A stretch of DNA of 64,000 nucleotides from Lytechinus pictus (taxonomy: Eukaryota), in assembly GCF_037042905.1 (NCBI RefSeq), contig NC_087246.1:12090001-12154000 (forward strand), given 5' to 3'. A model generated the notes under the pieces. The model saw nothing but the letters and a program-made list of their open reading frames with translations. It was not told where the DNA came from and made no database searches. This document shows, one piece after another, positions 14,869 through 62,500 of this stretch. The position numbers were made by a program, and so were the translations under genes. Each line of letters starts with the position of its first letter. Position 1 is the stretch's first letter.

Positions 14869-15434
14869 AACTGAATAAAATGGAATTGATTGCAGGGGGG
14901 GGGGGGCACAAATTTTATTATGATTGGGATGTGCCTCACAAAACCTCAGAATCGGGTCTAAGAACTGACAACAAGGTGTAAAATACAGGGTCTTGGGACC
15001 TATGATCTATTGGGCAGATTTATATGTGATTATCTAGTGAACCCTCTTGGCCTATGTATATTCATTAGCTGCAGACAATACCTTGCCCTTGCTTACCCAG
15101 ACATCAAAGCTTCACATCCTCGTACCACCTTACACATAAGAGGAATTGAGTGCCTTTGAAGGGGAATTCCACCTTGGTAAGAAAATTGTGTGAAAAAAGA
15201 AAATATGAAAGAAAGAATAAACTTTAAAAGATATTGGCAAGGAGTAAGGAAGTTATAGCTGTTTGAATAAAGAGATCACTAACACTACATTAATCTCAGA
15301 TTGAAAATTTGGTAAATTCTGTGGGGGACAACTCCCTTTTATTGTATACTTATACTATTTGTCTGGATTTTGTTATTTTCTCCTAAGTACTTATATCCCT
15401 TGGGTTAGTAATCAAATCTAATATAGATGATATA

Positions 15435-16253
15435 CAGTGCGTCCCAGAAAAAACGAAACCGAGATTTAGCGATGATTTATCATAACTTAATCATAAATAA
15501 AATAAACAAATGACCTACCAATGTAAAGCTTAGAATCTCCTCTTTCATCTGATATTACTTAGATAATTCCTCATACACGCATGAGTGAGCAAAAACAATT
15601 TGAAGAAAGGATACCAAAAACTCATTTGGTGGGGGGTATCTGAATTTCAAAGAGAAAATCACATGACTGAAAAGTTCAATATCTGCTCTTTTATTTGATA
15701 CCTTAATCACAGAAAATGGTCAAGAAGTAAAAAAGTTATGATCCCTCGAAACAATGCTTGTATTTCCATAATTTCATTAAATAAACGTGTTTTCACTGGC
15801 TTCCCACAGAAGCTATCGCACGGTAACAAAAGACTTAATGCATGGCTGATCGTCAACAAAACGGAATGTCGAGAGAGTTTGAACGCTAACCTGTAAAACC
15901 TCTTCATTTTATGAAATTATTGAAATTCAAGCCTTATTTCAAATAACCAGAACTTTGTTATTTCTTGACCATTTTCTGTAATTGAGGTATCAAATTAAAG
16001 AGCAGATATTGAACTTTTTAATCATGTGGTTTTCTTTTTAAAACCCAGATACGGCCCGCCAAATGAGTTTTTGGTATCCTTTCTTCAAATTGTTTTTGCT
16101 CACTCATGCGTGAATGAGGAATTATTTAAGTAATACCAGATGAAAGAGGAGATTCTAAGCTTTAAAATGGTAGGTCATTTGTCTATTGTATTTGTGATTA
16201 AGTTATGATAAATCATCGATAAATCTCGGTTTCGCTTTTTGTGGGACGCACTG
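15435..16253. mobile_element. Tc1/mariner-like foldback MITE with ~300-bp TIRs
   Basis: TA|cagtgcgtccca...tgggacgcactg|TA; arms ~15435-15737 and ~15951-16253 are near reverse complements. Confidence 0.9.
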
Positions 16254-16369
16254 TATTGTCATATGATCTCATTAAAGAAAGAAATATTTGGAACAAATGG
16301 AGGAGACCTTTCATCACAATGAAATGACTATGCCTGCACTTTGGAAGCCCACAGAACTGCCAACAACTT

Positions 16370-22653: not shown

Positions 22654-22950
22654 AAATCCCTAAATTGGCAACAAATCAGGAAATGAAATCACTGCTTGGG
22701 CTTTTCAAAAAGAAAATATTTGATTTTTAAATCCCTAAATTGGCAATGAATTGGGAAACAAATTCACTGCTTGGGATTTTTAAATAGAAAATATTTGATT
22801 TTGAAATCCCTAATTTGGCAACAAATCAGGAAATGAAAGAATTGCTTGGGATTTTCAAAAAGAAAATGATATTTGACTTTGAAATCCCTAAATTGGCAAT
22901 GTTGGGAAATAAATTACTTCTTGGAATTAAAATCTTCAAATAAGAAAATT
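22654..22950. repeat. Minisatellite, ~75-bp unit x ~4, alternating variants
   Basis: aaatccctaa(a/t)ttggcaa at 22654, 22729, 22804 and 22882. Confidence 0.85.
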
Positions 22951-24478: not shown

Positions 24479-24641
24479 TACCTCGGTCACATTTGCTCTA
24501 CGGTGGCCGTACGGCGAGTCAAAAACAGCAATTTTATTCATATTTATTCAAACCGTCTATATGTAGCTGGTATAAAAAAATGTTGAAACGGCTGTTTTCG
24601 ACTCGCCGTATGGCCGCCATAGAGCAAATGTGACCAAGGTA
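24479..24641. mobile_element. PIF/Harbinger-like palindromic MITE in the PPM1D 3' UTR
   Basis: TTA|tacctcggtcacatttgctcta...tagagcaaatgtgaccaaggta|TTA; ~55-bp arms. Confidence 0.85.
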
Positions 24642-41500: not shown

Positions 41501-44500
41501 CACCAGGAAAGGGAGCTCATTGCTGTGTGTCTTGCACATTCTATCTTCATCACATTTAACTTGTTAATAACTGTTTCCATGTCATATTTACAGCAAATTC
41601 AGGCTTTGGTTGCTCCTCCACAAAGTGATGAGCCTCCAAGAAAGTACAGAAGAACAGAACCAAGAAGAACAGGAAGAGCAACCAATAGAGATTCCTGTGA
41701 TAGCTGCACAGAGGGAGGAGATCTTATTTGCTGTGACCGTTGCCCTGCATCTTTTCACCTCCAGTGCTGGTAAATTTTATTTCTTAAGTCAGACATAGAC
41801 AAAAAATTAAAAAGCCCCTGAGAATTTCTAAAATAGAATTAGGCCTAGATCTAATGTTACTCTAGTAGATTAGAATTAGATTCTAGACATTAATAATACT
41901 AATACTCTAGAACAACATTACTCATTAGATTAGTCTACTTGCAATTGATTTTCAACCAAATTTGTCTGAACTGAAGATTTGAAAAGTCTTTTGATTTTTT
42001 TTTTGCTCCAGTCTTGGTCAGAGTAGAATCTACAGATCAATTGAAAGTAAAAAAATTTTGCTCATTATTCTGTTGATCAGGGTGAAACTAAGGACTGGTA
42101 TTTGAATGAAATCAAATACTGATGCTACAACTATATACTTGCCTTCTGCTATATAAATTTCTATTGACATAATGACAATGTAGAATTGGATTTCAATATA
42201 ATTTAAAGGTAAGTCCATGAAATAAAACTTTAATATTTGTGGCATTCTAAATTATAATGCTCAATTCTCAATAAAAGGGAATTCTGAGCAAAAGAGATCT
42301 TGGTTATACGTTATGGCACAAGAACATGCGTTGTGTCCTCTGAAATATTTCTTTGATTTGTACATTCAACAGAACACTTGATATTTTTTCTCTATTTTGG
42401 TAATTTCTGTACTGGTTAAAATTTGGAATCTACCAGTTGAAAAAACTAAGAACATACAAGTACAATTAGAGTACACCAAATGGGTATTGATTTCAAGCTA
42501 ACATTTGAAAATCTTGATACAGGAGTGATAATGAATAGACTTCCGTTCTCAATCCCAATATGGTGTTACAGTAAAGGAAAACTACTTATGCTGAAAGTAT
42601 CATAGTACTGTACACATGTACTTTGATAAAGATAAAATACTTGAAAAAATGTTTGAATAGATGATTTATACCCATTGAAAAGAGTCATATTAATCATGCA
42701 TGGCAATGTATTTCAACCAATTTCTATTATGCTTATCTAGTGTCATGGATATTTTAATCAAATTAGTTCTATTGAATTCACTTCCTTTTTTTTTTACAGA
42801 ATCCGATTTGTAGTCAAAATAAGTGATATGTAAGAAGTGGGTGGGAAAGAGGAAATAAGTGGAAAGAAAATCTTGTCTTTTTCTTTCTTGGCCTATAATT
42901 CTCTAATCCATTCAAGTGATTCAATACAGACATGCATTGTTAACATGTATGTCACATGACGTATGGATGGCTCAGTTAACATACTTGTTTGAAATCAACC
43001 AAATTTTTCATAATCCATTCAGTCTTTATCTTTTTCAACAATTTTTTTCCAGCTAAACTTAAATTGTTCATAGACCTAGATCTGCTAATAGGACTATAAC
43101 CTCTCCCTCCCTTTCCACTCCCTCCAAAAATCTTGAAGGTGGGATAGAATTGGTATTGGCTTAAAATGACATAGAAATGTTATGCATGTTCAGTAAAAAA
43201 ATGAATAAATTGATAGAAATGCAAAAGAACATTAAATGCATGAATTACTCTTGATATGGTATCTTCATGTTTTACTTTTAATAATGATTTAAGTAGGACT
43301 GAAAATCGCACTGAAATTCACAGTTACATTTCAGATCATGCCCATAGGCTTAGGATTAGGATAGGATGTTCAATATCACATGCACATTTGCATCTAAGCA
43401 TGACCTTTAGGCCTATATTTCACACTGAAATACACCCCCAAAACTAGGATCAGCAACTTTATTACACTTGAATTCAGATGCACTGTGTGTCTTACTTTGA
43501 CTTGACAAAGTAGACTTAATAGGAGCTAATGGAGTGTCCGTATACACATCTACATGTAAGCTGCAGGTCTATAATTGGAAAGTTATGCATACACTCAAAC
43601 TAGTATATAGTGTACATGTGAGCACTAAATGTATGTTACATGTGGGCAATTCCACATACATGTATGGGCTTTGCACTTCAGACAGGTGAATGCACCACAC
43701 TTTGAATTAACAGTATTCAAACAGAACTTTTTGCTGTTCACCTATAAATGTACATGCAACTGAATATTAAATGTGTCTGATGAACTCAACAAGAAATGTT
43801 TGAATTCTGTAAATTTGAAAAGGTGAACTGAATGTCATTCCCTCAAGCTGGAATTTTTCCTTTTGCTTTTTACATACATGTACTAGTGCCATGTACAGTA
43901 TATAAATACATGTACAGTATCTTGCTGTTTAGAGCTGTATTTAAGTGAATTTTTTAATTAGTGATTTCACCTCTTTTCATAGGCTACATGTACCGGAAGC
44001 TGGAGAGTTGCTTTCCTACTGACATTAAAATGTTTGTGATGCTACATGTACATGTAAGGCTTGCAAAGTTTTGATGATAAAGCACTATGAAATCGTGCTG
44101 TTAGGGACCATTGTAAATCAAGTCTCCATCATCGCCAGATTGGCAGGGGTTTGTTTGTAAACTTCATGAATTTGTGAACTATCAGCAGTGCAGTATGTAG
44201 CAACAATAACGGTCCAACTTGTTGACGCTGTGACTGTGAAACGAAAGGACATGTACCTCAGGATCAGTTTAGTGGACTTGTCTAAGCTAGCAACTGAACT
44301 TCGTCTTTAAAAACCCATCGAGCTATTATGTTTCATGTTACATAGATCCATGTGAGCATCTACTTAAAAAGGCTACAACTTTTTGATGGGGTATGCTTAA
44401 AAGCAGGAAAACACTCTAATGACGTTGTGGTTGCTGAAGTACACATCTATGTATATTACAAAATTTGATATTTGGATATATCTGTCAAATTTGTGTGTAA

Positions 44501-47500
44501 ATATACTATGTACAGTATGACAGAAATTTTGATACCAATTGGGTTGCTGTATATTTTTTAAATATACATATATTATATTAAAGAAGGCCCCCACATTTAT
44601 GATTAACCTTCCATTCTTATGGTGACTGGTGCTAAATTGCCAAAGACTCATGGAGTCTAGATGGAGATTATTATTTTCATTTTTGAAATGCAGGATTGTC
44701 AATGATATCTGAACAAGTATAAAACTCAAATGTGAGTTGAGTCAAGCTCGTAAATCTGGCACTTTATTTTTATTTAGGCCTTCATGCAGAGGGAAGGTAA
44801 ATCGCACTAGGCTCAGTTGTGGACTCATCAGCCTAGGTACTAAAAGATAGTGCAATGTGATAATATTTACAACGCTTCATTTCTTTAATATTTCTTAAAA
44901 TTTATTTTTCCCTTTGATGTCTCCACCTGAGCTGTGAAGCTACATGTAATACTGATACATGTACATGTAGTGCATATGCATGTGAGAAATGAGCAAAGGC
45001 ATTTTGATTTTAGACACTGCTTTCGTTCAGTCTTGTCTGCCAAGTTTCAGCATTGTAGAGCTAGCCACCTGTCTGTATAGATTATACCACTGGGCCATTT
45101 CATGGCGAGTGGGTACATGATGTAGTGAAAGACATGCGGTTTGACTTTATATTAAGTTAAGAATTGTCAGGAGTCTTCAATTCAAGACCTAATGTTAAAG
45201 AAAATGTCTGTCCTAGGAGCTACATGTATATTTGGATTCTGCTTTGTATGAGTGAGATTTCCTTTGAAGTTTGTCTGTGTCATACAGATATTTTTTCTTT
45301 TGTAGCAATAATGTTTGATGTTAGTTTATGACATTGTAGGTACATGTAATGTAGATTAATATGCTTTTTAACTGAAAGATACAGACTGCTAACAATCTCC
45401 AATGTCAATTAAAATGTGCATCTATGACCATGGCCTTTGATGGCTTGTGATAGATTTGAGCATTGGGAATAACAATTTGTATTGAACCCAATTGAAATGT
45501 TTGAGGGTTATTTTGCAATTGACAAGGATTTTCTTTTATATCACCGGTATAAGGGTATAGTGAGTTACTTGTTTTCAAATGCAGAAAAGAATCATAACCT
45601 TTTTCATAAGGATCACTATGACTATCCATACACTGTGCCTACATGTACATGGAGCTCAGCATACTTCATGCATTGTAATTTTATTTTGATGTTCATTTCT
45701 TGACCTATCACTCATGGAACATTCTGCAATCCACAGGCATGCACTTATGTACACAACAGTAAATTTAGGCCTAAAGTGTACATGGATTGCTTCCCTGTGA
45801 TGAAATGTAAAGAGTGAACTCAAGTCCAATTATGTAGGGGAAATGGGTGTCAGCCTGGCTGACTAGTATTTTATCATTCCCTCCGAAAGTGGACAAACTG
45901 GGGTACATGTAGTTGGATTGATCAATGGGTAATGCTATGTATGTACGGTCAAAATTGAGCATTATTAAGAATCTTATCTCAAAATCAGTTGCTCTAGCTG
46001 CATTTACCCAAGAGTTACAGCAGGTACAGCATGAATCGTTATTAATATGCATCCATCTAAGATTGTTTTCAATTTATAATCAAACAAATTGTTTGTTAAT
46101 CGGCCCACTTTATATGTATTGCATAGGGTTTCATGAGTTCACAATTTTTTGAAATGGCCAGATCCTCCAGACAAGATAATGTTTGTTAGCTTGGTTGAAA
46201 GTTGTTGACATGAAGAAAAGAGAAGGCAAAATACATGTAATTGAGTACATGTACATACCTGTAGAAGTCTCATTTGATAAAGATAAATCCTTTGTATTTC
46301 ACCATTATGCATGTAAGTATGTAGTGTGTAATTTCTCTTTCAACAACTGAAAATAAATGACCAATGCACAGTGAAAATTTTATCAGAATTAACATGGTAC
46401 ATGTAGAAATAATACATGTATCACTTTAGCATGGTTATGGTATGAATTGTGTCTGACAAATTTTACACAGAAATTGAGCTCAGTTTGCCTGAAACTGTAC
46501 TAGCAGACACCTGCACACATGCTAGAAATGTTTGTACATGAATTATACAGGCCAAGAGACTAAACATTTACCAGGGAGGGATTCATTCTCAAACTGAGCA
46601 TCAAGTATACCGATTCATTGACAGCACTACTGTCACCACATAATGTCCTATGTGTTGAATTGACTCTGTCTTTAGAGTAGATTATCTTACTGTGAATTTG
46701 GGGTAAATCCAGGGCTCTATAGGGGGGGGGGGGGTTACAGTGTAATATTGGCACCATAAATTTTCAATATCTTTAATATATAAGGGCCCTTTTAACTTTT
46801 TTTTCTTTGGTGTTGTGTTTTTATGTTCCCCAGGTAGAAAATGTGATGGATTTTATATCCATACATTTATTTAAAGCATCCATCATTTTTAAAGTTCATT
46901 ACATCTGGCTTCTTCACTTGTATAAATATCTAGCCTTTAAGACGTACTTTTAGGCATACTCAGTAGTAATGTGCTTATACCAGTTTATGATATCATACGT
47001 AGATAAATGCAAACAAAACATGACAGTCATTAATTAAACATTAGGTCTATCATTACATGTAATTTGGTATTTGATGACTGAGCAATGCAGATAATCATAT
47101 ATGATGAGGCTTGTGAATCAATTGAAATATAGGTGAATGTTGTTGTTTCTTGTTCAATGATAGCAAATAGTATGGTGGGTACATGTACATGTAGTTTCAA
47201 AGATATTAAAGGCTCAAGTTAACGTTACAGACATGTAATTAAAAAAAAACAAAGGAGAGATCAAATATGTACATAGATGCCTTTCTATCAATCTAAAAAC
47301 TCTGAAACCAACAAAAAATCTAAAGAAATGCTTTTGATACCTTATAATAAAAGATTTTTTGTGTAATTTATATCGTACCGATAATAATAGAACACATAAG
47401 TGTATGTGATGAAATTAAGATGGTGTTTCCGGTCACTTTATGTTTCACTTTTTTTGAAGCACTAAATGATTATTTTCGGACACAATTTTTTTCTGAGCTT

Positions 47501-50500
47501 CATTGTTGTAACATATCACAGTCAGACACAGGTGAAAAGTGGGACCTTTAAATACATAAAAAATTGATGCATTCCACCTGTTCGGGGGGGGGGGGGTGAT
47601 CCAAAGGACCTGTTTTATCCTTCCCTATTTTGCTGGTAAGTACTCTTCACTATTGAAATCAACAGTAGACCTACATGTACATGTATTCCCTTATGTACAT
47701 ATATAGGCAATAAAGATTAAAATATAAAGTTTAGCCATGTTTAACAGGCATTAGCATGTATTTACAACAGTGTTATGTACAGTATATCAGCTTGAGTGAT
47801 AAAAGTGCATACTAAAATTTGAATGAGTGTCATGCAATATGTCTAGTTGTGTGCCACAACTTTGAATCTCACTGCAAGATAATACCCAGCTTACCAGCGA
47901 TGTACATCATGCTGAACAACTTGGAGGCTCGTCATCATACTGGATGTATGAATGGGTAGTCAGCAACATTTCCCTTGGAGAAGGGATGTCTATCGGTCTT
48001 AATCAACAATCTATTCCTCCTGCCAGCTCAAAATTCTTTTTATATTAGAAATGGAAAAGGATTATTTTGACTGTAGTAATTGAGGCTTTAAACCGTCAGT
48101 GACTCAGCGAACGATATAAGTTGCACTGGGAAAAGGATCTACATGTATGTGGCTTTGAGAGGAAGTTCTGCTGTTAGTAGACTGACTCCAGTCTTCTTTT
48201 GCTACTTGAAGCACCAGAGTTTTAAAGAATTGATGGGTATGTGGTTGACAGGGGAGAGGGGAGTTTTTCCCCCTTCATCTTCTTCTTCAGGGCTAGGATA
48301 GAAAGTGCAGATCCATTGATGAATTCAATGAGTTTGAGGATAATTACTTGTCTGTTTTTAATGATTTTCTTATTCAAACTTGTTATGTTTTCTCTGAGGC
48401 TACCATACTTCTGTAATTGTATTTGAATCTTTTGAATTGTTGGTTATTTTACCAGAGCCCAGGGTGCTACATAACTTTTAGAAGCACTTGCCCTGTTGGG
48501 CAAGTAAATTTTTAAATAGTTGGAGTATACTTGCCCAAAGAAATCCTTGAAAGAAAAAAGTGTTACCTCTTCAAAAGAAAGTATTGCGGTTTTATAAACC
48601 ATTGACCTTTTTTTCTCTTTTGACATGAACTGATGTACCCTGTTATTGCATTTCTTTTTCCATAGTGATTTTAATACCCGTCATGATCAAATTTAGGGTC
48701 AATAAATCGTATCGACCCTTAGTTTGGTCATTCTACTCTGAGAATTTTGCTTGCCCAATTCAGGCAAGTGGTGTTGGTCTTCACTTCAAAACACTTGCCT
48801 GACTCTTAACTTTTACTTGCCCCGGGCAATCAGGCAAGTGCTTATGTAGCACCCTGCATAGCCAAATGATTATTAATATAACAATTATTTCCCCAAAAGC
48901 AAGGAAAGGAGGAAAAATTTGAAAGTAATTAATCTGTGTTTCTGGAATGAAAAATGTAGTGTAGGGTGGCATGATTTTGTATTGCATTCAGATCAGGGGA
49001 GCGTTTCATGAAAGGACTTGTCAACGTTTTATCCGACAAGTCCCATTTTATCCGACAGTTACCATAGTAAAAGTACCTCTCAGCCAATCAACATCAGAGA
49101 AAGATGTCAGATCTGACAACTTGTCGGATGAAAATGTTATTGAAACACTCCGCAGAACTCAAAAAAATCTTGTCAGTTTTTGTCTCACCTGCATATCAGA
49201 GTAAGACTAGGTGCCGCATTCCGACGGCGGCAGCATCAATATAATTAAAAAGTATATGGACCTAGTTCATGAAACTTGGACACAAGGGTGATCAAATATT
49301 ACTGAACATCTTACCCGAGTTTCAAGTCACATGACTAAGGTCAAAGGTCATTTAGGGTCAAAGAACTTTGGCTAAGTTGGGGTATTTGCTGAATTATCAT
49401 CATAACTTTGAAAGTTTATGGATCTGATTCATAAAACTTGGACCTAAGAGTAATCAAGTATCACTAAACATCTTGTGCGAGTTTCAGGTCACATGACCAA
49501 GGTCAAAGGTCATTAAGGTCAATGAACTTTGGCCATGTTGGAGGTAATTATTAAATTGCTGTCATAACTTTCAAAGTTTATGGATATAGTTTATGAATTG
49601 TGGACATAGGGGTAATCAAGTATCACTGACAAGTCTTAGGTCACATGGTCAAGGTCAAATGTCATTTAGGGTCAATGAATGTAGTATTGTGTCAACATCA
49701 AAACTTAACCGAAGGTTAAGTTTATTGAATGACAGCATAACTTAGAAAGTATATGGACCTAGTTCATGAAACCTGGACATAAGGTTAATCAAGTATTACT
49801 AAATATCCTGTCCGAGTTTCAGGTCACATGACTAAAGTCAAAGGTCATTTAGGGTCAATAAACTAAGACCATGTTGGGGGAGTCAAAATCTATAAGGTTA
49901 AGTTTTTGAAATGTCATCATAACTTAAAAAGTATATGAACTTAGTTCATGAAACCTGGACATATGGGTAATCAAGTATTACTGAACATCCTGTGCGAGTT
50001 TCAGGTCATATGACCAGGTCAAAGGTCATTTAGGGTCAATGAACTTTGGCCAAGTTGGGGGTATTTGTTGAATTACCATCATAACTTTGAAAGTTTATGG
50101 ATCTGATTCATAGCACTTACACGTAAGAGTAATCAAGTATCATTATACATTCTGTGCAAGTTTCAGGTAAACATGACCAAGGTCAAAGGCCATTTAAGGT
50201 CAATGAACTTTGGCCATGTTGGAGGTAATTATTAAATTGCTGTCATAACTTTCAAAGTTTATGGATATAGTTTATGAATTGTGGACATAAGGGATAATCA
50301 AGTATCACTGACAAGTCTTAGGTCACATGATCAAGGTCAAATGCCATTTAGGGTCAATGATCCTAGTATTGTATCATTATATGAACTATGTTTTTTGTGA
50401 ATAATTATTTATAGTAGTTTTCAAAGTCAGCATAGCTGCTATATTGAATCGTGTAATGCAAGTGAGACTGCCAGAGTCGCTCCACTTGTCTCTGATTTGA

Positions 50501-53500
50501 AACTGCAAATCTAGTGCTTAATCATATTTTGCTGTAAAATGATTCTGCAATAAAATTATTCATTCTCTCTTTTTGTTGGTGGTCACCTTTGTCAAGTGAT
50601 GTTCCCCTTTAACACATTTATTTGCATTTGTTTATCTACTGGACAAAAACACTTTAATGGTCTGCATTTGTACCTTTATTAACAATGATGTACATGTATA
50701 CTAGTCAGTAGTTATGTACAATGTACATGTATTTTACCTTGTTTTGATGTAGATAATTTTGAAGAGTGTCCTGACTTTTCTTGATGACAATAACACAGAA
50801 AACATTGAACATGAATCATACTGTACATGCACTGTATGTACCAAACTTGCACAATGTAATGCAGCATTGGTCTATTGTGCAGTTTTGAGCTGAGTACATT
50901 TTCAGTGGATATTACAGAAGGTCATTTGGAGCTTTAGCAGGGTCAATGATATTGTTAGCCTTGTACAACCAGTCTTTCGGTCAGATTCTATTTCATATAG
51001 TCATATTTCATATATTTCATATATATTTCATGCATGTTTCATGAACATTTATCCTCAAAGTTTGCTGAATTGTTGTTTACCAGACTTTATAAAAAACATT
51101 TACATATACAGAATACAATAGGCAAAAGATGAAAGACAGACGTGGAATACTTTTTATAGACCTAAAGAAGTCCTCTTTGCTGTTATGATGTCTGTAGGGC
51201 CTATACTTTTACACGATCTCCTCTGAGGCAATCAAACTTAGTTTATTATTATTCCATTTGGGGGGAAATTGCATAAATTTTTGTTTCACATACATGTAAT
51301 CTGTTGAAGTCCTATTCAAGCGCCAGCTTTTACTTTCTCACTTGAAGCAAAGTCCCTTCACTCTCCTAAATATTTTTGTAATATGAGCATTGAGCAGCTA
51401 TATTTAATAAACTATTTCATACAGAAGTATTTGGATGTTGACAATTATATTATTAATTTACATTTATTTTCTGCTCTATGAAGTGTTGAACAGTCTTCAA
51501 AATGTATTGAATATTGCTCTTACAATGTTTGATCATTTTCTTTTCTATAAATTGAACTTAAAACTATATGATTTTGAAAAAAAAGAAGTCTTCCTCTTGA
51601 CATTAATGTAGAGAGTTTGACATAATGCATGCATTATTATGGTACTCTGAAAGCCAGTACTTCATGCAAGGCCTTGTGATCAGTTCTTGTATTATGAAGG
51701 TTTTTTTCTTTTTGCACAACAGTTTATCCTTGTACCCCATTTGTGAAAGTGAATTTTAAATGAACATAACAGGACTTGCATTGCCATTGAATTATTTATA
51801 TTTAATTTTCATATCCTGGAAAATCAGTGTTTTATTAAACCTGTGTAATTATAGATTTACTTGAAGAGGATCTTGGAAATCTGTACAAATCACATTAATG
51901 GTGAATTTGTTACATTTGCTAACTAATAGGTAAGGATTCTCTCTCCATTTCTCTTCCTACAGTAACCCTCCTATATCAGAAGAGGATCTACCCTCAGGAG
52001 AATGGTTGTGTCACAGATGCACAGTAGCACCGCAGGTAAGATTGAATATCATGGAACAAACCATTTTGCATTTATGGGGGTGTGGTATGCTGGGAGCTGA
52101 GTTGAGATAGGAAGCTTTCCTTGAAGCATCTTGTCATTTTTCAGTGACAAATTTTCTCTCACCCTATCAGATTTGAAAATGTTAAAAGCTAAATTTGTTA
52201 GTGTACATGTAAATCAGTGAAAAATTTTATGAAAAACTTGTCTTGGCATGACCATTTATCATTGCATGACATATGTGCATTCAATTATGTTAAACTCCTT
52301 TGGATGCCATGGTGAAAAGTAGAGGTTTCCTCCCAAAGGTTAAAGCTTGTGTTTCTCAGTACAGTTACAGTACACATTCTCCTATATTCCCTTTATAATC
52401 TAATAGTTACAATGGAGAAATATAGATCATTTGAATTAGGGCAGTACTATATCTCTGCTACGTTCATCCATTTCTATTTGATGGTGAACTCAACCTAGAT
52501 ACAGTAAAGGGAAATCAATTACTTTTTCTGGTCTACTATAGTAGTAATTGTAGCAAACTATGCAATGTGAATTACATGAAACAGATCCTTAGGTGGACAT
52601 ATGATTGTGATAAATTATGCATTCACTGTTGACAAAGCAAGAAATGTCAAAGATCATTCTGTCTTACTATTTTTCAATTTGGTCTCTTGTTTCACTGGAA
52701 ATTCTCTACAAATTTCTGATGAATAATGAAATAGTGTAAATATCAGGCATTCTGAGCGGCTTTCATACAGACTCATCAGAAAAGGAAGTTTTTACTCTGC
52801 TACAGGTTAACCTACTTTTAATATTAGATGTTTGAACAAACATTTCATTGTTAACCCATAATTTTTGTGGGATTTCATTTCGAGGTTTTGTATTTGTGAT
52901 GTCCTTTGTGAGCTGCTCTCTTTTTATGGCACATACATGAAATTGTTTTTTTTAATGATTTATTTTCGCAAATACATTTAGACTTGCAAGTCCAGGTAGT
53001 TGATAGCTACATGTACTCATTCCAATCATTTGAAGGACATGGAATATATAATGTTTGTATAGATTTCTGTTAGAATAGATTAACTGACATTAAAATTGTC
53101 AAGTATTTGTTACAAAGACGGTTACTCAACGAAAGTGACCATGATCCTATATGTAGTACTTGTATATGAACCTATCCCTTCAGGGTAAGGGGACAGGGAA
53201 ATATTGAGCCTTATTTGGAGACTATCCATGGGGTATTGAAACTCGTACCTTTTAGAAATTAAAGGTCAATAGAATCAAAAGAACTTGCCTCTAGAATAGG
53301 TGACCTTTTCATGAATTTTTTTTTTTTAATTTAACATATGGCTTCATTCTTTTTTTTCTCTCTCTCTCTGCACCCCTCTCTCTTTGAAATTAATTATGTA
53401 TTGTCAACTACCATAGCACAATGCAACTTTTAGGGAATAGGTGCAGAAGATTATTACACGTTTATCTATATTCTGGAGCCTCAAGATTGAACCTTTATTT

Positions 53501-56500
53501 TCAGCTCAGTCTTAACTTTAGCTCAATGTTAACTGTAACCTTAATTCTAATCTTGTTCTTACCCTACTCCTAATGCTTGCTTCTGGTACCAAGTATACTT
53601 GTCAATGTGGTGACTGCCATAATAGCTACTTAAAGGTTTTCTCAGGTACATCATTGAGTTGACTTCATTGCTTTCTTCCTTTTACCATGAAGCCATTGAA
53701 CACTGAGGTCACACTCTCTGACACTATCAAGTCTATTGAGAAGGCGCAACGCTCTGAGAGAGAGAAGAAGCAGAAGGAGGTTGCTGCTGCTGCCAAGGAG
53801 AAGGAGAGAGCTGCCTCCACCTCCCTCCGGCTGAATGATCGACTGAACGACAGACTCATGAGAGAAGGAAGGGCATGTTTGCGGCTGGCTCAGATCCAGG
53901 CCTACAAGTAAGCCTTCATTACCATAATTCACAAATGAGTTTTAGCCTACGAAACCCTCTCCTTGTTTTATCCGAGCATAGTGTGAATTGCCCATGTGCG
54001 CACATACATGAAATATCTGATTGGATCATATGCAGTGTGTGAGTATGCATACAAAACTGAAGTTGGGGTATGAACCTCCTTTGTGAATTTTGGTCAGAAG
54101 AGAATTGGATGAAAATTTGTATGTCCTAGTTTCATTTGTAAATGGTCATATCCATTAATTTCCTTATTCCTTGAAGTAAGGCATCCACAAAATCGCCCTT
54201 TTGTTGAATTTAATTATAAGATTGGGTAAAGGATAAATGAATAAGATTAAAAATTATAATTCAATATCACAAAGCCAACAGTCCTGTATGGAATTCTGTA
54301 ATGCAGGCAAGACTCCCAGAGGCGTTGCTTTTTTTAATATATTTATTTTCATTATTACATTTTTCTATTCCATAACTCTTTTTAAAAAAGATCAAATTAA
54401 CCGGTAATTATTTTCAGTCCGTAATTTGTAGTGAGAACATATTTCTTTATGTGAAAGATGGATAATTTGAGGCTGCATTGTATTTCCAGTAAATCCAGTC
54501 AACTTAATGGCAACCCCCAGTGCTCCAATCTATTTTGAATTATCATTTTGTCAAAAGGTAGAATTCATTCTCTGATATATGATTTACTCTTTCTCCAGGG
54601 AGGCACAGATAGAGGCTGGGATAATACCAAAGGAAATGCCAGAAGAGGGAGATACCAATCGGACGGAGGGAACAGAAGAAGAAAAGATGGATGTTGACAA
54701 GGCAAAGGATTTAGTGGAGGTGGCTGAAGAAAAGAAAGACAAGGAGGAAGAGGAGGTTTATGTCAGGTTTGAGAATCCTCTAAGCTACCTCATCAAAGCT
54801 GTAGCCATTCAGAATCCGAAGCAGTTCTCTCTCCCTCCAGAGATGATGCAACATGCACCCCTACCAGGTAATTTGGGATGGCCCCTCTGTCATTTCATAT
54901 TGTACAATACATTGAATGTGAGATTGTCTAAAGATTAATAAAAAACAAAACAGTATTCAAATCAAAACCTAGTTTCCTTTTTTAGAGGGAGGGGGGGGGG
55001 GAATAAAAAAAGCCCATCTATAGCTACTGATAATGTCTGAAAATTCAGGAGCCCTTTAAAAAATCCATTATTTGTCCTTATTCCTAGGCTTTACAAGTTG
55101 CAAGTTCCTGAGAGAAATACTGTAATTAATGTGCAAATTTTCTTTTGTAAAACTATATCACATACAGTGTATTCTCAGCTCTCCTTGTCATGATTTTATT
55201 TCTTTTTATGCTCAGGGACAACTAAGAAGAAGAAAAAAGAGGAACTATCCAAGAACTACAAGAAGCCTCATGAGCTAGATAATATGATGATCCCCCTACC
55301 TGCTAAAGTCTGCTTCACATGTAACAAGTAAGTTCTACTTGGTAAAAGCAGCAAAAATTGTATTGGTCTTTTTTTTAATTTACAGTGAGTGGTATAATTA
55401 TGACGGATGTGGCCTATTCTTAATTTCATGTCAATTTTAGCTTTTCATATGCCATCTGTTTAAACATCTGGATTTAAATTGATTTAATTTTGAGATCTGA
55501 ACATAAATCTTACCATAAAATCTTTCTTTTATTTAATATCCCTACCAGAGGCAATATATGCAAATGGTAACTGAAATGTCTTGCTTTACTTTTTCTTTTC
55601 TACTCTTTTTTCTATTCTCTCTCTCTTACACCCTCACTCTCTTGGCGCACACACTCTTTCTGTCTTTCTCTCTGTATCTCTTCACTACTCTGCCTGTCTC
55701 TGTCATTGTTAACTCTACACGATATTCTTAATATTTCATCTTAGACTTCCAAAGTAGTTTTGTTCTTAACAGAATCAAGTTTTGTGTGCAATGCAAAGTT
55801 GGCATTTATTCAGATAAAGACTTGCTGGTTTACTGCTTTGGGAGAGTTACATGTAAATGAAAACAAACAAATCATTTCCTGAATACCAGGTCATGGAAGT
55901 AGGGTTGTTCAAAGCAGTTCACACTCATGCAAAATTACGGTTCAGATGATGGTCATGATGAGTGTAAACATTGTATGCTTTGAAAAATAACCAATGTTGG
56001 CTCTTAGATACCTTATAACCGAAACATCATTTTGTCTCATCAATGAAGTGCTCACAAACCAACACTTAAAACTTTTTTTTTTTGGTACTTACATGTATTC
56101 TAATCTTGCTTGTGTTTTATGTAATGTGTGCTAGAGATCATGCCATGGCAGTTTACTTCTCACATGTACATTCTATGTACTTGATTCAAAATTCAAAATT
56201 AGTGTTTGTTTAAATGTACCTTGGTAATTTTGGGGAAAATGCTGATGAGCCGACCCTGGCTTGGCTTCTTTGGAAATAAATTTTCTACATGTATCATGAA
56301 AACATAAAAGAATTTATATTGTAATATTTGTGTAAGAATTCATAAACTGAGTATTTGTGTTAGTTTGAATAAAAGTAAGCTGTGGTTTGCCCAAAGCAGG
56401 AAGGATGTACATGCTTGTCTAACTTTTTCAGTGTCATGCAAGAAAGTCCCTATTACTATGTACTATCAAAATCAGTTGAGACCTTCTAATGGGAACCGTA

Positions 56501-59500
56501 CCACTTGTCAGATGAAATAACAACCTGACTACTCTATTACTGGAAAAGATTTACATGTACTTTTACTGACTTTGTTGAAGCTTGTTGTGAATATGTATGA
56601 TTAGATTGCCATTTTATGCCATCCTTGTACCAAAAAAAAAATGATTAAGGCACATGAAACCTAGCATTCCATAGAAGTATGCTCTACATTTTCACTTTAA
56701 TCTGGACCTACATCTGGATTCACTCATCAGAATACCACCTTTATTTGTTTCATTAACTCATAATCCTATTGAAATGACAACTCTGTATATTCTTTATTTA
56801 ATGATTTTGTTGTTGGATGCCTGTAAGAGTGTATGAAAACGTTTATTTCCTATGACTGTATGATATTTCTACATCAATTTCTTTCAAGATGACATTGATA
56901 CATTCATTTAGTGCAGAATTTTTCACTCAATCATTTTGTCTATTATTTATTTGTACTTCAGAACATGTCGTGTAGCACCCCTTCTCCAATGTGACTACTG
57001 CCCTCTGCTGTTCCATAGAGACTGCCTGAATCCCCCTATTACATCCTTACCTACTGGCAGGTGGATGTGCCCCAATCATCCAGAATATGCATTGGTAAGT
57101 AATAGAGATGAGATACATTGAGGGGTTCCTGGTAGGGTGTTTGTGTAGTGCTGATTTTGACACCAGTCACAGCACTGTCAATAACATGAAGCTGGTGCCT
57201 GGAAGTGACTGCATGAGGTGTTAAGCTGTGATTAGTATGATTTTTTTTGTTAACCCAAATCCACCGTGGAGCTAGGTTAGGCAAACTGATTCATAATCTT
57301 GACACCAACGTATAACGTGAAGCCCTTTCACTGAATCACAATGTGTTGGGCTATCAATAATGTGATTAGTATCATTTTGATATCCACATTCGATGTTGAA
57401 GTTAGGTTAGGCATTTTTTTAATTGCTCTCAATATCAACACTATACCAAATTTGAAATCATCCATTGTGTTGAGTGTTGATTTTTACGCTTAGCTGAGCG
57501 TTGGGAGAAACTACAATGAACAGTTTAAGTAGTTATTATAAGGTTTCAAAAAGAAGTTTGGACATGCCTTTGATGATGCTTTAATATTGTATCTATCATG
57601 CAAAAATATGTTATTCTTGTTCTTAGTGTAGTGTTAAATAAATTATATTTCTAGTATTGAATTTGATGAATATTAGTCATTCATGACGTCTCTATGGAAG
57701 AAAGCAATGATAATAATTGTTAATTTACTTATCACAACTTGCATTCACATAGATTTTTGTAGTTGCTTCACAAAACATTCCTGGTCCGTATAATCCTTGT
57801 TTTTGCTTTGAATACCATGATAATTTCGGAAATTGTGTCAATGTTATATCTGTTAAAGAATTAACGGTATGATTTTAAAAACCTATGATCTTACAGCCAG
57901 CATTCTACATGTAGATTGCAGGTGATACATACAGTGGTTCTAAAAAGTTAGTGAACCCCTCCAGAAAATAAACATATTTTAAAGTGTTCAAATTCTGCCA
58001 TCTTTTAGATATTTAATTGTGAAGTCAGGTGATGTAGTTTGTTTCTCTGGGCTCGCCGAATGTTGTAGCATTGTTGTCTACGTTCAACACTCAGCACAAA
58101 GGAATGCATTTTCTGGTGGGGTTCACTAACTTTTTAGCACCACTGTACATTATACAAAATGTTTAATACACTGCTTAACATTGTTATAATCCCTCTGTTT
58201 ATTGTTTACCCTGTCAACATTATGCAAATATAAAATTGCATGTGAAGGAAAACAAGAAATTGATAGTCTTAATGACCTTGACCTTACAGCCAGAATTCCA
58301 GAATGGCGGTCACACAGAACGAGTGAAGATCTTCAACCAATTCCAGGGCAAGGTAGACCAGCAAGCTGTCAAACTCCAGTTCATCAACAAAATCCATAGA
58401 TCTGGACCTCCATGGAAAGAGAAATGTAAATGGCGCAAGACAATCAAGGTGAGGCATCACTGCCACTCGTATTGATATTTAGATACCATCCTGGACTAGA
58501 GATCCCCAAATACATTAAATGGGAGAAGGGTGTGGCAGTCTACAGTGACATGAATTACACTTATCTTCATAATAGACATGGGCATGGCAAGCTAAATTAT
58601 ATTCAGATCATCCTCAAACTTCAATTAAGCATGGCATGACAAAGGTTAGCTAATTAAGTTTAGTTATCAGAATAGTTTTCAGACATATCGCCTTGATCTT
58701 CATCAACTAATGCTTTTTATATGAGAGATTACCTTTGGTAACAACTAAAACTCTTCCATTTCCTACCAGGTACCTGGAGCCATCAAGAATCAATATGCAC
58801 TGCCTCCTCCATTACTCCCCCTCTGCCATGAGCGCCCCCCTCCTATGATAGGCCCAGTGGATGAAGTCAAGAAACCTGGTCCTCTAACTCAGCAGGAAGA
58901 ACAAGAAGAGGTCTGTATTTGTCTTCTTTCTTTTAAAATCACTCATTTTGAAATAGTAAGTTGTTTAGTAACTTGGTAGTTTTCTTTTCTTTCAAGAGGG
59001 AATGGGTGGCCCATAACACAAAGGGTTTTGTGATGGATTGCAAATCTGAAAGAACAGTTCTTGTTCCTGCTCAGTATTTCTAACAAAACAATAAGTAAGA
59101 GCCAATAAGAATGGTTCTTTCAATCAGTCAAACCTGCATTGGCTACCACCTGTATAAAAGGACCACTTGTTTATAAAGACCATAAATTTTGTTTCCTTTA
59201 ATTTTCCTTTTAAAACATGTATTGAAGGAACCTGTGTCCAAAGAGCATGTGCTCATAAAGACCACTTTTCTTGTCTCTTTTGGCATCATTAAAAATGTTG
59301 ATCTGACTTGGACCCCATTTACACATGGGCTGGTTTCATGGAGTCGGCCTCACGCTGGCGTCATGCCGTTTTAAAAAAAAAACGAAGTGTGTTTAGTTTA
59401 CATATAGCAGAAAAGGGGGCTTGACAACCTCCCGTTTACACATGGTAAGGCGGCCAGCAGCAGGGCCACTTGAAAGAGCGCAATACCGAGGTCAATGCAA

Positions 59501-62500
59501 TAGAGTTAGATCAATGACGTAATGACTCCCGTAAGCCGACCTCAGTCCGCTTTGTATTAACACATATGAGAAGGCGGCTTCACGCCGCCTCAAAGGCGAC
59601 CTCAAACCACCTCCAGAGGTGGACCGAAATCGGGGCAGCTTCAAGATGACATCAGTCCACTTGTGTGATTACACATACATTCAAGGCAGCGTGAGACCGG
59701 CCTCATGCCACCTTCACTCGTATTTGTAAATGAGGTTTTGGATACACCCTCTTGGAGAGATTGTGTATTGTACAGAGAATACATTTGATAATGGAATGCT
59801 TCAAAAATTAATTGTCATTTCATAGTATATATTTTTTGTATTCACAGTGGTTGAAAGGTGTAGTGGCTCTGCAGACAAGTATAGCAAGACATTTAGCTCA
59901 GAAGTCACTACCTAAAGAACCTACCATTAAACCAAAAATCATCACTGCTTCTATGCTCTCGAAGCCTTCATCTGCTCCAACCATAGTCACAGCCACACCG
60001 TCCAGTCACAGCACAACACCGGTCAGTGATACATCATCAAGTGTTACATCATCCAGCATTGCATCCACTAACCAGGAAGCAAAGAGCACAACTACGGTTA
60101 CAACAACCACCACAAACTCTTGCAGCATGAAAGACACAAATGTGGTAGAGTCTTTGAGCAGAGAATTTCGGACTGCCAAAAGGGATGTTTATAAGTATGA
60201 TTTGATTGACACGCAAGAACCAAAAATTAGAACGGTTGCAGATTTAAAGGCTTTGCACAATGGACCACTCAAACCAATTAGTGCAGTTACCTCATTTATG
60301 TCAAATGGGCCATCAAGTTTGTACAAGAGCAAAACGGAACTTGTCTTAGAAGCAGCTGAACACTTGAACAACCATGTCATGGTCAAGACGAAAAACAATG
60401 GAACATCTCTCTCCTCAGAGGAAAAGACGTTACATGATTCTCCATCCACTAGCATTATGAATGGTAGTATAACAAACAATGATAGCTCGGAGTCAAAGGT
60501 CGTGACCTCCATGCAGAGAGTGACCCCTGCAGGGGTCAAGTCACCACCTGCAGTGGCCTGCTCATCAGCCAAGACCAATGCCACATCAACAGTCATGCTC
60601 AGTAGTGGAAGCGTGGTGGTACCATCGTCTGCTAAGGTTGTGTCAACAACGCAAGCAGGAAACCTCAAGTTTACCACCATCACCATGCCAACCAAGATGG
60701 CTGTTGGTGTAGGTCAAGGGTCACCAGGATTAACGGGAAGAGTAGTGACAATACCAGCTTCCTCTGGTGAGAAGTACTTTATATTTTGAATAAATCCCCC
60801 CCCCCCCCTCCACCCCAAAAATGAATAGAAATAATTAAATTATAATAAATTAATAAATAAATAACAATAATAATGATTAATTAGTAAAAATAAAGGAAGA
60901 AAGAGAAAAAGAACAATAAGATCAGCTTTGTTTTCAACAATCCTTGATACTCATCTGTTATGATGTTTTTTTATCAGCTGAATTGAATTATGGGAATTTT
61001 TTGTATATGATCTGGAAGTTGGTTTTGGATTTTACTTGTTGGTTCTGAAATTCTAAAATATAATAACAAAATGTTGATTGATTGAAATGTAGCTCTGTCT
61101 TAAGATATAATGGATCATGACATGATAATATATTATTCCATCAAGGTTCTTGTTTTCTAAATCCTTTGTTTTGTCATATAATTTGACCTTTGGCAGGTAA
61201 GTTGAGTCCTTCACCTTTGAACTCTGGTAAGATCACACCTGCAACCTTGGGTTCATCACCAGCTATTATCAATCTCAATAGCTCTCTACAATCATGTATA
61301 GATGGCAATGGAGGTATGTATCACCTTTTATTCTCTCAGTCTTATTTTTATTTGTTTTTTCACGTCATGATTTTTATTAGAAAACATTCAAGAAAGGAGA
61401 ACTAGAAATTATTTGACTATCCAAATATTTGTTGATAATTGTCATTGAAGCATTTGTATACTTCTTAAATAAACCACTCAGCTGGATGTTCTGTGGGTTA
61501 GAAATTATTTTGAGGTTCCTGTATAATTAATGTTTTGTGTTTATGTTGATAGTTTGATTTATTCTTTCATCAGAATACATGGCCATGTCACATATATAAT
61601 TATATTTACTTTTATGTTTTGGAAAAGATGCTATATAAATCATATATATTATATCAATATTTACATTCAATTTTATTTCTTGGAAGTTTGCCCTAAATTT
61701 ATAGTAACAATTTTTCATATATTTATGTGACAGGGCCTTGGTGGAGCTAGAAATAGATTATGTATAAATGATTGACTTGTCAGTAGATAGAAAAGAACAG
61801 AAAATCAAATTAACTTTGGGTCATTCAAAAGTTCATGATGAACTTAATAAGAGTATGACAAGTTTTTAATTTTGCACTTTTCCCCAATTAACAGAAGTGG
61901 AGTTGAGTAAGTTAGATGAGAGGCTGGTCCAGATTCTTGCCTGGCAGAGATTACAGCAATTATTACCTCAAAAGGTAATCCATCTTTCACACAGTTTACA
62001 ATAAGGTTTTACATATGACAACATGTTTTACAGGTTTTACTGTTGATTGGCCAAGTAATGGCTTAACCATTGTTTGTAATAGTTCTAGAGGTGTTTCACA
62101 TAGATTTAATTCATCATACTTTAATTCCCAGTATAATACAGATATGCTCTCCTGTGTTTTTTAAATAATATGTCATGTGTGCATTGACACTTCAGCAGCA
62201 TATTTTGTCATTCTTTTTTTTTCTTTTTGTGAAAAACCCTTTCGATTGTTCAGTTTTGCCAAGTAATTAAAATTCCATGCTCGAGGCATGCCATCATTGT
62301 AACCATTTGTGTATTAAATGTATATCAGTTAAATGCTGCAGTGTTGTATTTTATTACTTTTCTCAAAATATAAAAGCTATTCCAGTAAATAGTAATTTGA
62401 TGAAAATATTGTTTGCTACCTGAATAATTTGAAAGATTAATACTGGTTTAGATTAAAATTGTAGACATCTTTATGTACAAACATTTGCTAATGGTATTTG

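What the first reader, a model, noticed from the sequence alone, without database searches (positions are those of the whole stretch)
43551..48147. Extreme, chained over-representation of the palindrome TACATGTA in gene bodies: candidate transposon excision-scar system
Seen: I count about 47 TACATGTA in the window by eye, about 24 of them in this 4.6 kb of PHF12 intron 2. At roughly 34% GC about 2-3 are expected in 64 kb. They sit in otherwise unique sequence, were not seen in exons and are largely absent from the young MITEs. They often chain through a shared TA (TACATGTACATGTA at 21993, 44043, 44956, 47180, 47672), and TACAGTA/TACTGTA 7-mers co-occur (e.g. 43894, 43913, 44511). Established: Tc1/mariner elements duplicate TA and leave 2-3 terminal bases on excision (TA-CA-TG-TA, TA-CAG-TA). 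Two elements with TA|CAG...CTG|TA ends are in this window (15435, 57932). Inference: these are accumulated insertion/excision scars from an element that repeatedly targets transcribed gene-body chromatin, each cycle adding 5-6 bp and a new TA target.
Basis: partly seen in the sequence, partly recalled or inferred. Interest (0 to 1): 0.8.

Follow-up and report, generated by a model that had tools for sequence, protein, structure and literature searches.

The report
Transposon excision scars crowd an intron
The eight-letter palindrome TACATGTA litters this sea urchin gene because cut-and-paste transposons landed on TA sites, left again and each time left six extra letters; these scars pile up about 20 times faster in one 5' intron than in the rest of the compared sequence.

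Summary
TACATGTA occurs 47 times in the window, against about 2-4 expected. 24 copies lie in 43551-48147, all with different flanks.

The window is Lytechinus pictus.
- 10 events (12 units) are clean presence or absence of CATGTA at a bare TA.
- 4 more are the 5-bp forms CAGTA or CTGTA.
- CATGTA at a TA makes up 8 of 33 six-bp indels.
- Shared copies diverge at the neutral rate (7.9% against 7.1%), so the motif is not a conserved site and does not arise by point mutation.
- 7 of the 10 events fall in the 4.6-kb field, split between both species. The field is therefore a persistent hotspot (p=1e-5).

Two Asterias starfish species give the same result, with 4 clean events. At the PHF12 locus the motif is 6-15-fold enriched and biased to the 5' part of the gene in urchins, starfish, a brittle star and an acorn worm.

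Resident TA-flanked elements end in CAGTG...CACTG. The best reading is Tc1-type excision scars that keep 2 nt from each end.

Not shown: polarity from an outgroup, a site with element and scar as alleles, the source transposase, and the cause of the hotspot.

The scan had already reached this reading on other DNA of this genome.

The parts
43551..48147 (.). Scar field in the PHF12 intron after the PHD-finger exon: 24 TACATGTA in 4.6 kb (5.2 per kb, against 0.39 per kb in the rest of the window)
   Evidence: 7 of the 10 lineage-specific CATGTA events between L. pictus and L. variegatus fall here, 3 in L. pictus and 4 in L. variegatus, p=1.1e-5.
44043..44056 (.). Double scar TACATGTACATGTA. L. 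variegatus has a bare TA here (12-bp difference).
   Evidence: flanks otherwise nearly identical, the 12-bp indel is CATGTACATGTA.
45904..45911 (.). Single scar. L. variegatus has a bare TA.
   Evidence: The S. purpuratus outgroup is ambiguous at this site.
47180..47193 (.). Double scar. L. variegatus has only one unit, so the chain differs by 6 bp.
44198..44199 (.). Bare TA in L. pictus where L. variegatus has TACATGTA (L001 13786)
44448..44449 (.). Bare TA in L. pictus where L. variegatus has TACATGTACAGTA (L001 14018), a 6-bp scar plus a 5-bp scar
47130..47131 (.). Bare TA in L. pictus where L. variegatus has TACATGTA (L001 17076)
47168..47169 (.). Bare TA in L. pictus where L. variegatus has TACATGTA (L001 17120)
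51078..51079 (.). Bare TA in L. pictus where L. variegatus has TACATGTA (L001 19828). A second such site is at 51107-51108 (L001 19871). A CAGTA-only site is at 51114-51115 (L001 19884).
62378..62379 (.). Bare TA in L. pictus where L. variegatus has TACATGTA (L001 34751)
50819..50825 (.). 5-bp scar TACTGTA. L. variegatus lacks CTGTA (Sleeping Beauty-type footprint).
45640..45647 (.). Shared scar whose second TA received an extra CAGTA in L. variegatus (L001 15121), so a scar was re-used as a target
56090..56097 (.). TACATGTA in L. pictus against TATGTA in L. variegatus. TATGTA is the classic Tc3-type 4-bp footprint form.
   Evidence: Tc3 forms from bioRxiv 10.1101/659086
57930..58147 (.). Resident 218-bp MITE with TA|CAGTGG...CCACTG|TA ends, shared with L. 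variegatus. Its terminal CA and TG are the letters inside the scar.
15433..16255 (.). Resident 823-bp foldback element with TA|CAGTGCGTCCC...GGGACGCACTG|TA ends
24479..24641 (.). TA-flanked MITE with CC...GG ends (CCTCGG...CCAAGG). This is a second family, whose predicted 2+2 scar is TACCGGTA.
21993..22006 (.). Double scar outside the field, within a smaller cluster of 6 copies at 20244-23295

Best explanation
TACATGTA is the scar left when a TA-targeting cut-and-paste transposon of the IS630/Tc1/mariner type, with 5'-CA...TG-3' ends, jumps in and out again. Resident CAGTG...CACTG elements have such ends.

Steps:
1. The element integrates at a TA and duplicates it. Shown by TA-flanked resident elements.
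2. The transposase cuts 2 nt inside each end, so CA stays on both flanks. This is inferred from a rule that holds for several families here, and it is the known geometry of Tc1 and Tc3.
3. Germline end joining keeps both 2-nt overhangs, giving TA-CA-TG-TA, a net gain of 6 bp. The product is shown; the repair route is inferred. Less often a 3-nt overlap gives TACAGTA or TACTGTA, a gain of 5 bp. Shown.
4. The scar then drifts and decays neutrally. Shown.
5. Each scar offers two more TA targets, so chains grow. Shown.
6. The insert-and-excise rate is about 20 times higher in the 5' intron field than in the rest of the aligned locus, in both Lytechinus species. At PHF12 the scars are biased to the 5' part of the gene in six ambulacrarian species. 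Shown. The cause is unknown. I infer either a preference for promoter-proximal transcribed chromatin or a local choice of repair pathway.
For: Unit origin at TA:
- The window is identical to L. pictus GCA_037042905.1.
- Against the L. variegatus ortholog, 39.7 kb aligns with 7.1% mismatch and 619 indels.
- 8 of 33 six-bp indels are CATGTA at a TA. One 12-bp indel is CATGTACATGTA and one 11-bp indel is CATGTACAGTA. Four events are CAGTA or CTGTA.

Specificity:
- TACATGTA is 47 of 542 TA-N4-TA words, yet it accounts for 8 of the 12 six-bp 'X+TA at TA' indels. That is about a 20-fold higher rate per copy.

Not made by point mutation:
- Each of the 24 one-off neighbours has 0-9 copies, against 47 for the motif.
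- Their summed excess (72 against about 50) fits decay at about 0.06 substitutions per site.

Neutral afterwards:
- 19 of 240 motif positions differ between the species (7.9%), against 7.1% background.

Link to the elements:
- Resident TA-flanked elements end in CAGTG...CACTG.
- The only enriched TA-N4-TA words are the palindromes CATG, GGCC, GATC and CCGG.
- TA-flanked MITEs with CA/TG, GG/CC and CC/GG ends are present in these loci.

Hotspot:
- 7 of the 10 events lie in 4.1 of 39.7 aligned kb, p=1.1e-5, split 3 to 4 between the species.

Replication:
- Asterias rubens against A. amurensis gives 4 clean TA/TACATGTA indels, and 4 of 14 six-bp indels are CATGTA.
- Enrichment at PHF12 loci is 6-15-fold in L. 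variegatus, S. purpuratus, two Asterias species, Amphiura and Ptychodera.
- Holothuria and Antedon show no TACATGTA enrichment but do show TAGGCCTA enrichment.
- 5' bias: 77 copies in 72 kb against 16 in 105.5 kb.

Footprint chemistry:
- 2-nt cuts for Tc1 and Tc3 and 3-nt cuts for Sleeping Beauty are described in bioRxiv 10.1101/659086 and PMC7827188.
Against: - No outgroup polarises the indels. S. purpuratus aligns at only one event site, and there it is ambiguous, carrying a CATG-containing stretch.
- No orthologous site was caught with a full element in one species and a scar in the other.
- The dominant 6-bp form is not the footprint reported as commonest for Tc3 (TACATA, TATGTA) or for Sleeping Beauty (TACAGTA, TACTGTA).
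- The 2+2 rule rests on agreement between only three MITE families and three palindromes.
- The source transposase is not in the window.
- The flank preference is weak. G/C at -1 is fairly consistent, but A at -3 is seen only in L. pictus and Ptychodera.
- The link with low CpG (methylated gene body) holds in this window (rho -0.67) but not in the other loci.
Confidence: 0.85

Rival explanations
1. The 6-bp unit is inserted at TA by some other process that is not transposon excision, for example an unknown TA-specific nuclease with templated fill-in.
For: No element was caught allelic to a scar. The 6-bp form is not the canonical Tc3 or Sleeping Beauty footprint.
Against: - The inserted letters match the ends of resident TA-flanked elements.
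- The canonical 5-bp Sleeping Beauty-type forms occur at the same sites and in the same chains.
- Other lineages carry other TA-xy-y'x'-TA palindromes, as expected from different transposon families.
- No such alternative process is known.
Confidence: 0.06
2. The scars come from an old burst that ended before the two Lytechinus species split. On this view the TA/TACATGTA differences are precise deletions between the two TAs, not new insertions.
For: Polarity is not shown. The ratio of one-off to perfect copies (about 0.5) would also fit a single cohort about 0.06 substitutions per site old. S. purpuratus has a CATG-containing stretch at the 45904 site.
Against: - Other TA-N4-TA words show about 20-fold fewer such 6-bp indels per copy.
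- An 8-bp palindrome has no known reason to be deleted precisely.
- The excess persists in lineages separated by far more than the motif's half-life, and the Asterias pair shows the same indels. Creation must therefore recur.
Confidence: 0.05
3. TACATGTA is a functional palindromic site kept by selection, such as a binding site for a dimeric protein or an RNA signal in introns.
For: It is a palindrome, it clusters in the same intron of the same gene in distant species, and it has a weak symmetric flank signal.
Against: - Motif positions diverge as fast as the background (7.9% against 7.1%).
- Copies come and go as whole units at bare TA sites.
- Copies are not orthologous between distant species.
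- The excess is concentrated in the exact 8-mer, with no family of tolerated variants.
Confidence: 0.02
4. The motif arises by point mutation or mutational bias (for example CpG decay of TACGTGTA or TACACGTA), or by slippage of a TACATG hexamer.
For: Slippage could add or remove units in existing chains, as at 47180. 8 sites differ between the species by a single substitution.
Against: - The precursor words are rarer than the product: TACGTGTA 0, TACACGTA 1, and every neighbour 9 or fewer against 47.
- New copies appear at a bare TA, where there is no CATG to slip on.
- The substitution differences match the number expected from neutral decay.
Confidence: 0.02

Closest known systems
Tc1/Tc3 excision footprints (Caenorhabditis elegans)
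   Same: TA target duplication; CA...TG element ends; cuts staggered by 2 nt that leave terminal nucleotides at the donor site (bioRxiv 10.1101/659086).
   Different: The commonest Tc3 footprints reported are TACATA and TATGTA (+4 bp). Here +6 bp TACATGTA dominates: 10 events, against one or two TATGTA cases. That means both overhangs are kept rather than overlapped. I found no report of these scars building up into the commonest words of a genome region.
Sleeping Beauty canonical footprints TACAGTA and TACTGTA
   Same: TA|CAG...CTG|TA ends and repair by non-homologous end joining. The same 5-bp forms occur here as clean indels at TA, 4 events.
   Different: They are the minority form here. 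Sleeping Beauty integrates close to randomly across the genome (PMC7827188), whereas these scars show a roughly 20-fold local hotspot. The Sleeping Beauty target consensus ANNTANNT (PMC8934666) is matched only partly.
Minos (Tc1 family) 6-bp footprint
   Same: A footprint of four nucleotides between two TAs, in frame. Minos is active in L. pictus (PMC11361634, title and abstract only).
   Different: The Minos footprint is recalled from memory (Arca et al. 1997) and could not be verified in the library. It is described as four nucleotides from one end. Here the four letters fit two from each end, because 4-nt forms such as TACAGTTA or TAGGTGTA are not enriched.
Footprints of plant hAT and Mutator elements
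   Same: Short scars left by excision that persist as indels and can add codons.
   Different: Those scars are variable and derive from the 8-9-bp target duplication. They are not one fixed word at a fixed dinucleotide.

Membership tests
Tc1/mariner-type excision footprint | The scar is bounded by a duplicated TA, and the empty site is a single TA | tested here: met
   10 Lytechinus and 4 Asterias events show TACATGTA (or a chain) against a bare TA with matching flanks.
Tc1/mariner-type excision footprint | The inner letters equal the terminal nucleotides of elements resident in the genome | tested here: met
   TA|CAGTG...CACTG|TA elements lie at 15433-16255 and 57930-58147. GG..CC and CC..GG MITEs match the enriched TAGGCCTA and TACCGGTA.
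Tc1/mariner-type excision footprint | The scar arises as one event, not by substitutions | tested here: met
   Indel spectrum and scarcity of neighbour words.
Tc1/mariner-type excision footprint | A full element is seen at the same site in another allele or species (excision caught in the act) | tested here: not met
   None of the large indels in about 75 kb of pairwise alignment is a TA|CA..TG|TA element opposite a scar. The sample is small, so this is weak evidence against.
Tc1/mariner-type excision footprint | The scar form equals the canonical footprint of a characterised family (Tc3: TACATA, TATGTA; Sleeping Beauty: TACAGTA, TACTGTA) | tested here: inconclusive
   The Sleeping Beauty-type 5-bp forms are present (4 events) and TATGTA is seen once or twice. 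The main form, TACATGTA, is not the reported canonical one.
Tc1/mariner-type excision footprint | An active transposase of the family exists in the genome | not tested
   No transposase ORF lies in the window. An earlier scan note reports a young Tc1 family with an intact transposase elsewhere in this genome (s1-306781). I did not check it.
Conserved cis-regulatory or protein-binding palindrome | Lower divergence than the surrounding neutral sequence at orthologous sites | tested here: not met
   7.9% at motif positions against 7.1% background. Copies are gained and lost as units.
Hexanucleotide microsatellite (TACATG)n | Arrays of several units that change by whole-unit slippage from an existing array | tested here: not met
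   37 of 42 sites are single units, the longest array in the window has two units, and new units appear at a bare TA.

The most novel reading that the evidence does not exclude
The scar fields may be a fossil map of where a Tc1-type transposon could enter and leave germline chromatin. On this reading the element, or the repair of its excision sites, is directed to the promoter-proximal part of transcribed genes. That preference would be conserved from acorn worms to sea urchins and has not been described for Tc1/mariner elements, which are regarded as near-random. Scar density would then read out ancestral germline chromatin state from sequence alone.
Probability: 0.3. Interest if true: 0.8.

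Novelty: new variant of a known kind. Interest (0 to 1): 0.62.

Why it matters
The mechanism, transposon excision footprints, is textbook. Three things appear to be undescribed in the literature I could search.
1. The scars accumulate to the point that one scar word is the third commonest 8-mer in this window and in the L. variegatus locus, and the commonest in the part of the L. pictus locus held as L002. It supplies about a quarter of all 6-bp indels between sister species.
2. The dominant scar keeps two letters from each element end, which differs from the canonical Tc3 and Sleeping Beauty outcomes. This says something about end joining in the echinoderm germline.
3. The scars form in sharply bounded fields that stay hot in two species after they split, and they sit in the 5' part of the same gene in six ambulacrarian species.

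If this holds genome-wide, scars give a countable and datable record of cut-and-paste traffic. Resident copies alone miss that traffic: this window has 47 scars against 2 resident elements. Scars would also be a source of in-frame 2-codon insertions.

L. pictus is a laboratory model with transposon transgenesis, so the predictions can be tested directly.

Tried and rejected
- Population test by reads. The only runs served turned out to be L. variegatus: 30 of 39 alternative alleles equal the L. variegatus reference. Their contigs were fragmented and the difference lists were truncated. This only confirmed that the L. variegatus assembly state is real.
- S. purpuratus as an outgroup. A few intron blocks align at 63-73% identity, but only one event site (45904) is covered and it is ambiguous. 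No polarity was obtained.
- Search for an element opposite a scar among large indels. None was found. The large indels are piggyBac-like (TTAA), hAT-like (8-bp duplication), SINE-like or other MITEs.
- A model of 4-nt self-complementary CATG overhangs, in the manner of Minos. It is disfavoured because the resident ends are CAGT, GGTG and CCTY, and the corresponding 4-nt words are not enriched, while the 2+2 palindromes are.
- Sleeping Beauty-like ANNTANNT target context. A at -3 is significant in L. pictus (p=0.002 to 0.004) and Ptychodera only. G/C at -1 is more consistent. I treat this as weak.
- Link to CpG depletion, a proxy for gene-body methylation. It is strong in this window (rho -0.67, p=3e-5) but not significant in the L. 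variegatus and two Asterias loci tested.
- Literature searches for the motif with 'footprint', 'transposon' or 'urchin' found nothing relevant. The Minos 6-bp footprint could not be verified.
- The extra 12.7 kb of L. pictus beyond the window (L002) holds only 2 copies, both shared with L. variegatus.


Full report
**Observation**

- Dinucleotide shuffles give 1.7 (largest 6). Order-2 to order-4 Markov models give 2.9 to 7.2.
- It is the third commonest 8-mer, after poly-A and poly-T.
- The 8-mer is the unit. Of 77 ACATGT, 57 are preceded by T, 56 are followed by A, and 47 have both.
- All 47 flanks differ.
- No copy lies in a recognisable coding exon, and none lies in the roughly 10.5 kb of DNA present only in this species.

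**Identity of the sequence**

A protein search with a PHF12 exon led to Lytechinus proteins. The window is 100% identical over 20 kb to L. pictus assembly GCA_037042905.1 (locus L002). The orthologous PPM1D-PHF12 locus of L. variegatus (L001) aligns collinearly at 76-94% identity.

The public runs offered for this stretch are L. variegatus too: 30 of 39 alternative alleles match its reference.

**The decisive test: sister-species alignment**

Over 39.7 kb of aligned sequence there is 7.1% mismatch and 619 indels. Every copy in either species fell into one of three classes.

1. Shared by both species: 17 sites.
2. Differing by point substitutions: 8 sites by one, 4 by two, 1 by three.
3. Clean presence or absence of the unit at a bare TA with matching flanks:
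   - In L. pictus: 44043-44056 (two units against TA), 45904, and the second unit at 47186.
   - In L. variegatus, opposite bare TAs at window 44198, 44448 (CATGTA plus CAGTA), 47130, 47168, 51078, 51107 and 62378.

That makes 10 events and 12 units.
- Among 33 six-bp indels, 8 are exactly CATGTA at a TA.
- There are also clean 5-bp CAGTA or CTGTA indels at TA (window 50819; L. variegatus opposite 45646 and 51114; and within the 11-bp event).
- TACATGTA is only 47 of 542 TA-N4-TA words, yet it supplies 8 of the 12 six-bp indels of the form 'X+TA at TA'. That is about 20-fold more per copy.

**What this excludes**

Origin by point mutation is excluded.
- Every one-off neighbour has 0-9 copies, against 47 for the motif.
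- The CpG-containing candidate precursors have 0 and 1 copies.
- The summed excess of neighbours (72 against about 50) is what decay of unit-born copies at about 0.06 substitutions per site would give.

Selective maintenance is excluded.
- 19 of 240 motif positions differ between the species (7.9%), against 7.1% around them.
- The split of 17 shared, 8 one-off and 5 multiply changed sites is close to the neutral expectation.

Slippage cannot start a unit at a bare TA.

**Link to transposons**

- The inner letters CA and TG are the terminal dinucleotides of the resident TA-flanked elements: CAGTGG...CCACTG at 57930-58147 and CAGTGCG...CGCACTG at 15433-16255.
- Among all TA-N4-TA words, only palindromes are enriched. 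TACATGTA reaches 47 copies in L. pictus and 39 in L. variegatus. TAGGCCTA reaches 6 and 5 copies against an expected 0.3-0.4. TAGATCTA has 8 copies in L. pictus, and TACCGGTA has 4 in L. variegatus.
- TA-flanked MITEs with GG..CC ends (L001 16102-16577, absent from L. pictus) and CC..GG ends (24479-24641; L001 6475-6634) are present.
- Words expected from a 4-nt overhang of those ends are not enriched.

So the rule is two letters from each end.
- That fits the 2-nt staggered cut described for Tc1 and Tc3, with both overhangs retained at joining.
- The minority 5-bp forms are the canonical Sleeping Beauty-type outcome of a 3-nt overlap.
- The main form differs from the reported commonest Tc3 scars, TACATA and TATGTA. 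TATGTA was seen here once opposite a TACATGTA (56090) and once as a 4-bp indel.

**Polarity**

No outgroup resolves it. S. purpuratus aligns at one event site only, and ambiguously. I infer insertion for four reasons.
1. The standing 12-16-fold excess needs a source.
2. Precise deletion would have to be about 20-fold more frequent than for other TA-N4-TA words.
3. Chains grow by units.
4. The excess is present in lineages separated by far more than the motif's half-life, so creation must recur.

**Hotspot**

Seven of the ten events lie in the field, which is 4.1 of the 39.7 aligned kb (p=1.1e-5). Three are in L. pictus and four in L. variegatus.

The field is therefore not a single old burst or an effect of DNA age. 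It is a place where insertion followed by excision has kept happening about 20 times faster in both lineages.

With about 5 events per kb per substitution per site across the 27.7 kb aligned within the window, and a decay rate of 8, the equilibrium density is about 0.6 per kb. The observed density is 0.7 to 1.2 per kb.

**Replication and breadth**

- Asterias rubens against A. amurensis (35.7 kb aligned, 4.8% mismatch) gives 4 clean TA/TACATGTA indels. 4 of 14 six-bp indels are CATGTA. There is also a triple chain.
- Counts at orthologous PHF12 loci:

| Species | Observed | Expected |
|---|---|---|
| L. variegatus | 39 | 2.7 |
| S. purpuratus | 22 | 2.1 |
| A. rubens | 15 | 1.5 |
| A. amurensis | 18 | 1.4 |
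| Amphiura filiformis | 15 | 1.95 |
| Ptychodera flava | 12 | 1.9 |
| Holothuria leucospilota | 3 | 2.1 |
| Antedon mediterranea | 3 | 1.65 |
| Pecten maximus | 8 | 2.7 |

- Holothuria and Antedon instead show TAGGCCTA, at 5 and 8 copies against about 0.3-0.4 expected.
- Different palindromes in different lineages are what transposon families with different ends would give.
- In all six enriched loci the copies sit in the first 12 kb of the gene: 77 in 72 kb, against 16 in the remaining 105.5 kb of gene body, a 7-fold difference.
- In A. rubens the cluster lies in the same intron as here, after the PHD-finger exon.

**Limits**

- No site was caught with an element opposite a scar.
- The transposase was not identified.
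- The chromatin explanation is untested.
- The flank context is weak. G/C next to the TA is fairly consistent, while A at -3 is not.
- The link to CpG depletion holds only in this window.
- All cross-species statements rest on one locus per species.

**Earlier notes of this scan**

Many windows of this genome carry the same observation. Three follow-ups reached the excision-scar reading on other DNA. I treated these as leads.

The new results here are:
- the sister-species indel test at this locus;
- the parallel accumulation in both species;
- the neutral decay;
- the 2+2 rule across several families;
- the survey across ambulacrarian species.

**Verdict**

This is a new variant of a known kind: a known mechanism with an unreported scar form, scale and hotspot behaviour.

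Noticed in passing
window 34732-35233 and 40558-41853; L001 4979-5175: TAGGCCTA and TAGATCTA cluster at the two promoters (PPM1D and PHF12) rather than in the intron field, and they differ between the species. At 35226, L. pictus has TAGATCTA where L. variegatus has TAGGCCTA, with another TAGGCCTA 3 bp upstream of it. The differences are less clean than for TACATGTA. They may be scars of GG..CC and GA..TC families with a different target preference.
   Followed up: partly
L001 16102-16577 (opposite window ~46613): A 476-bp TA-flanked MITE with GGTGGTTTCAGACC...GGTTTGAAACCACC ends is present in L. variegatus and absent from L. pictus. This is a recent insertion of the family whose predicted 2+2 scar is TAGGCCTA.
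   Followed up: partly
L001 27462-31142 (opposite window 58625-58628): A 3.7-kb insertion in L. variegatus only, with TTAA|CCCTAAAT...TTTAGGG|TTAA ends. It looks like a piggyBac-type element.
   Followed up: no
window 25890-27607: A 1.7-kb insertion in L. pictus only, flanked by an 8-bp duplication (CTTCTAAC) and with TAAGCCTGAG...CTCAGGCTTA ends. It looks hAT-like. It sits just upstream of the last PPM1D exon.
   Followed up: no
window 31616-34193: A 2.6-kb near-perfect palindrome (390-nt arms, 97% complementary) with TTAA-flanked AGGAGAATGAAAC ends. It is absent from L. variegatus at this site, and related copies occur elsewhere in both loci.
   Followed up: no
window 47172-47663: This stretch reaches word depths of up to 3x10^5 in L. 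variegatus read contigs, against about 50 nearby. It is a very abundant short repeat with a G-run, sitting inside the scar field.
   Followed up: no
L006 (Holothuria leucospilota) and L008 (Antedon mediterranea): These two echinoderm PHF12 loci lack the TACATGTA excess but have 5 and 8 TAGGCCTA, against about 0.3-0.4 expected.
   Followed up: partly
L010 (Pecten maximus): The scallop PHF12 locus carries a tandem satellite whose 8-mers occur about 74 times each. TACATGTA is only weakly enriched there (8 against 2.7) with no 5' bias.
   Followed up: no
window 46075-46152: L. variegatus reads from one sample show two alleles here (depth 43.9 of 79.3), so that species is heterozygous in this intron.
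   Followed up: no
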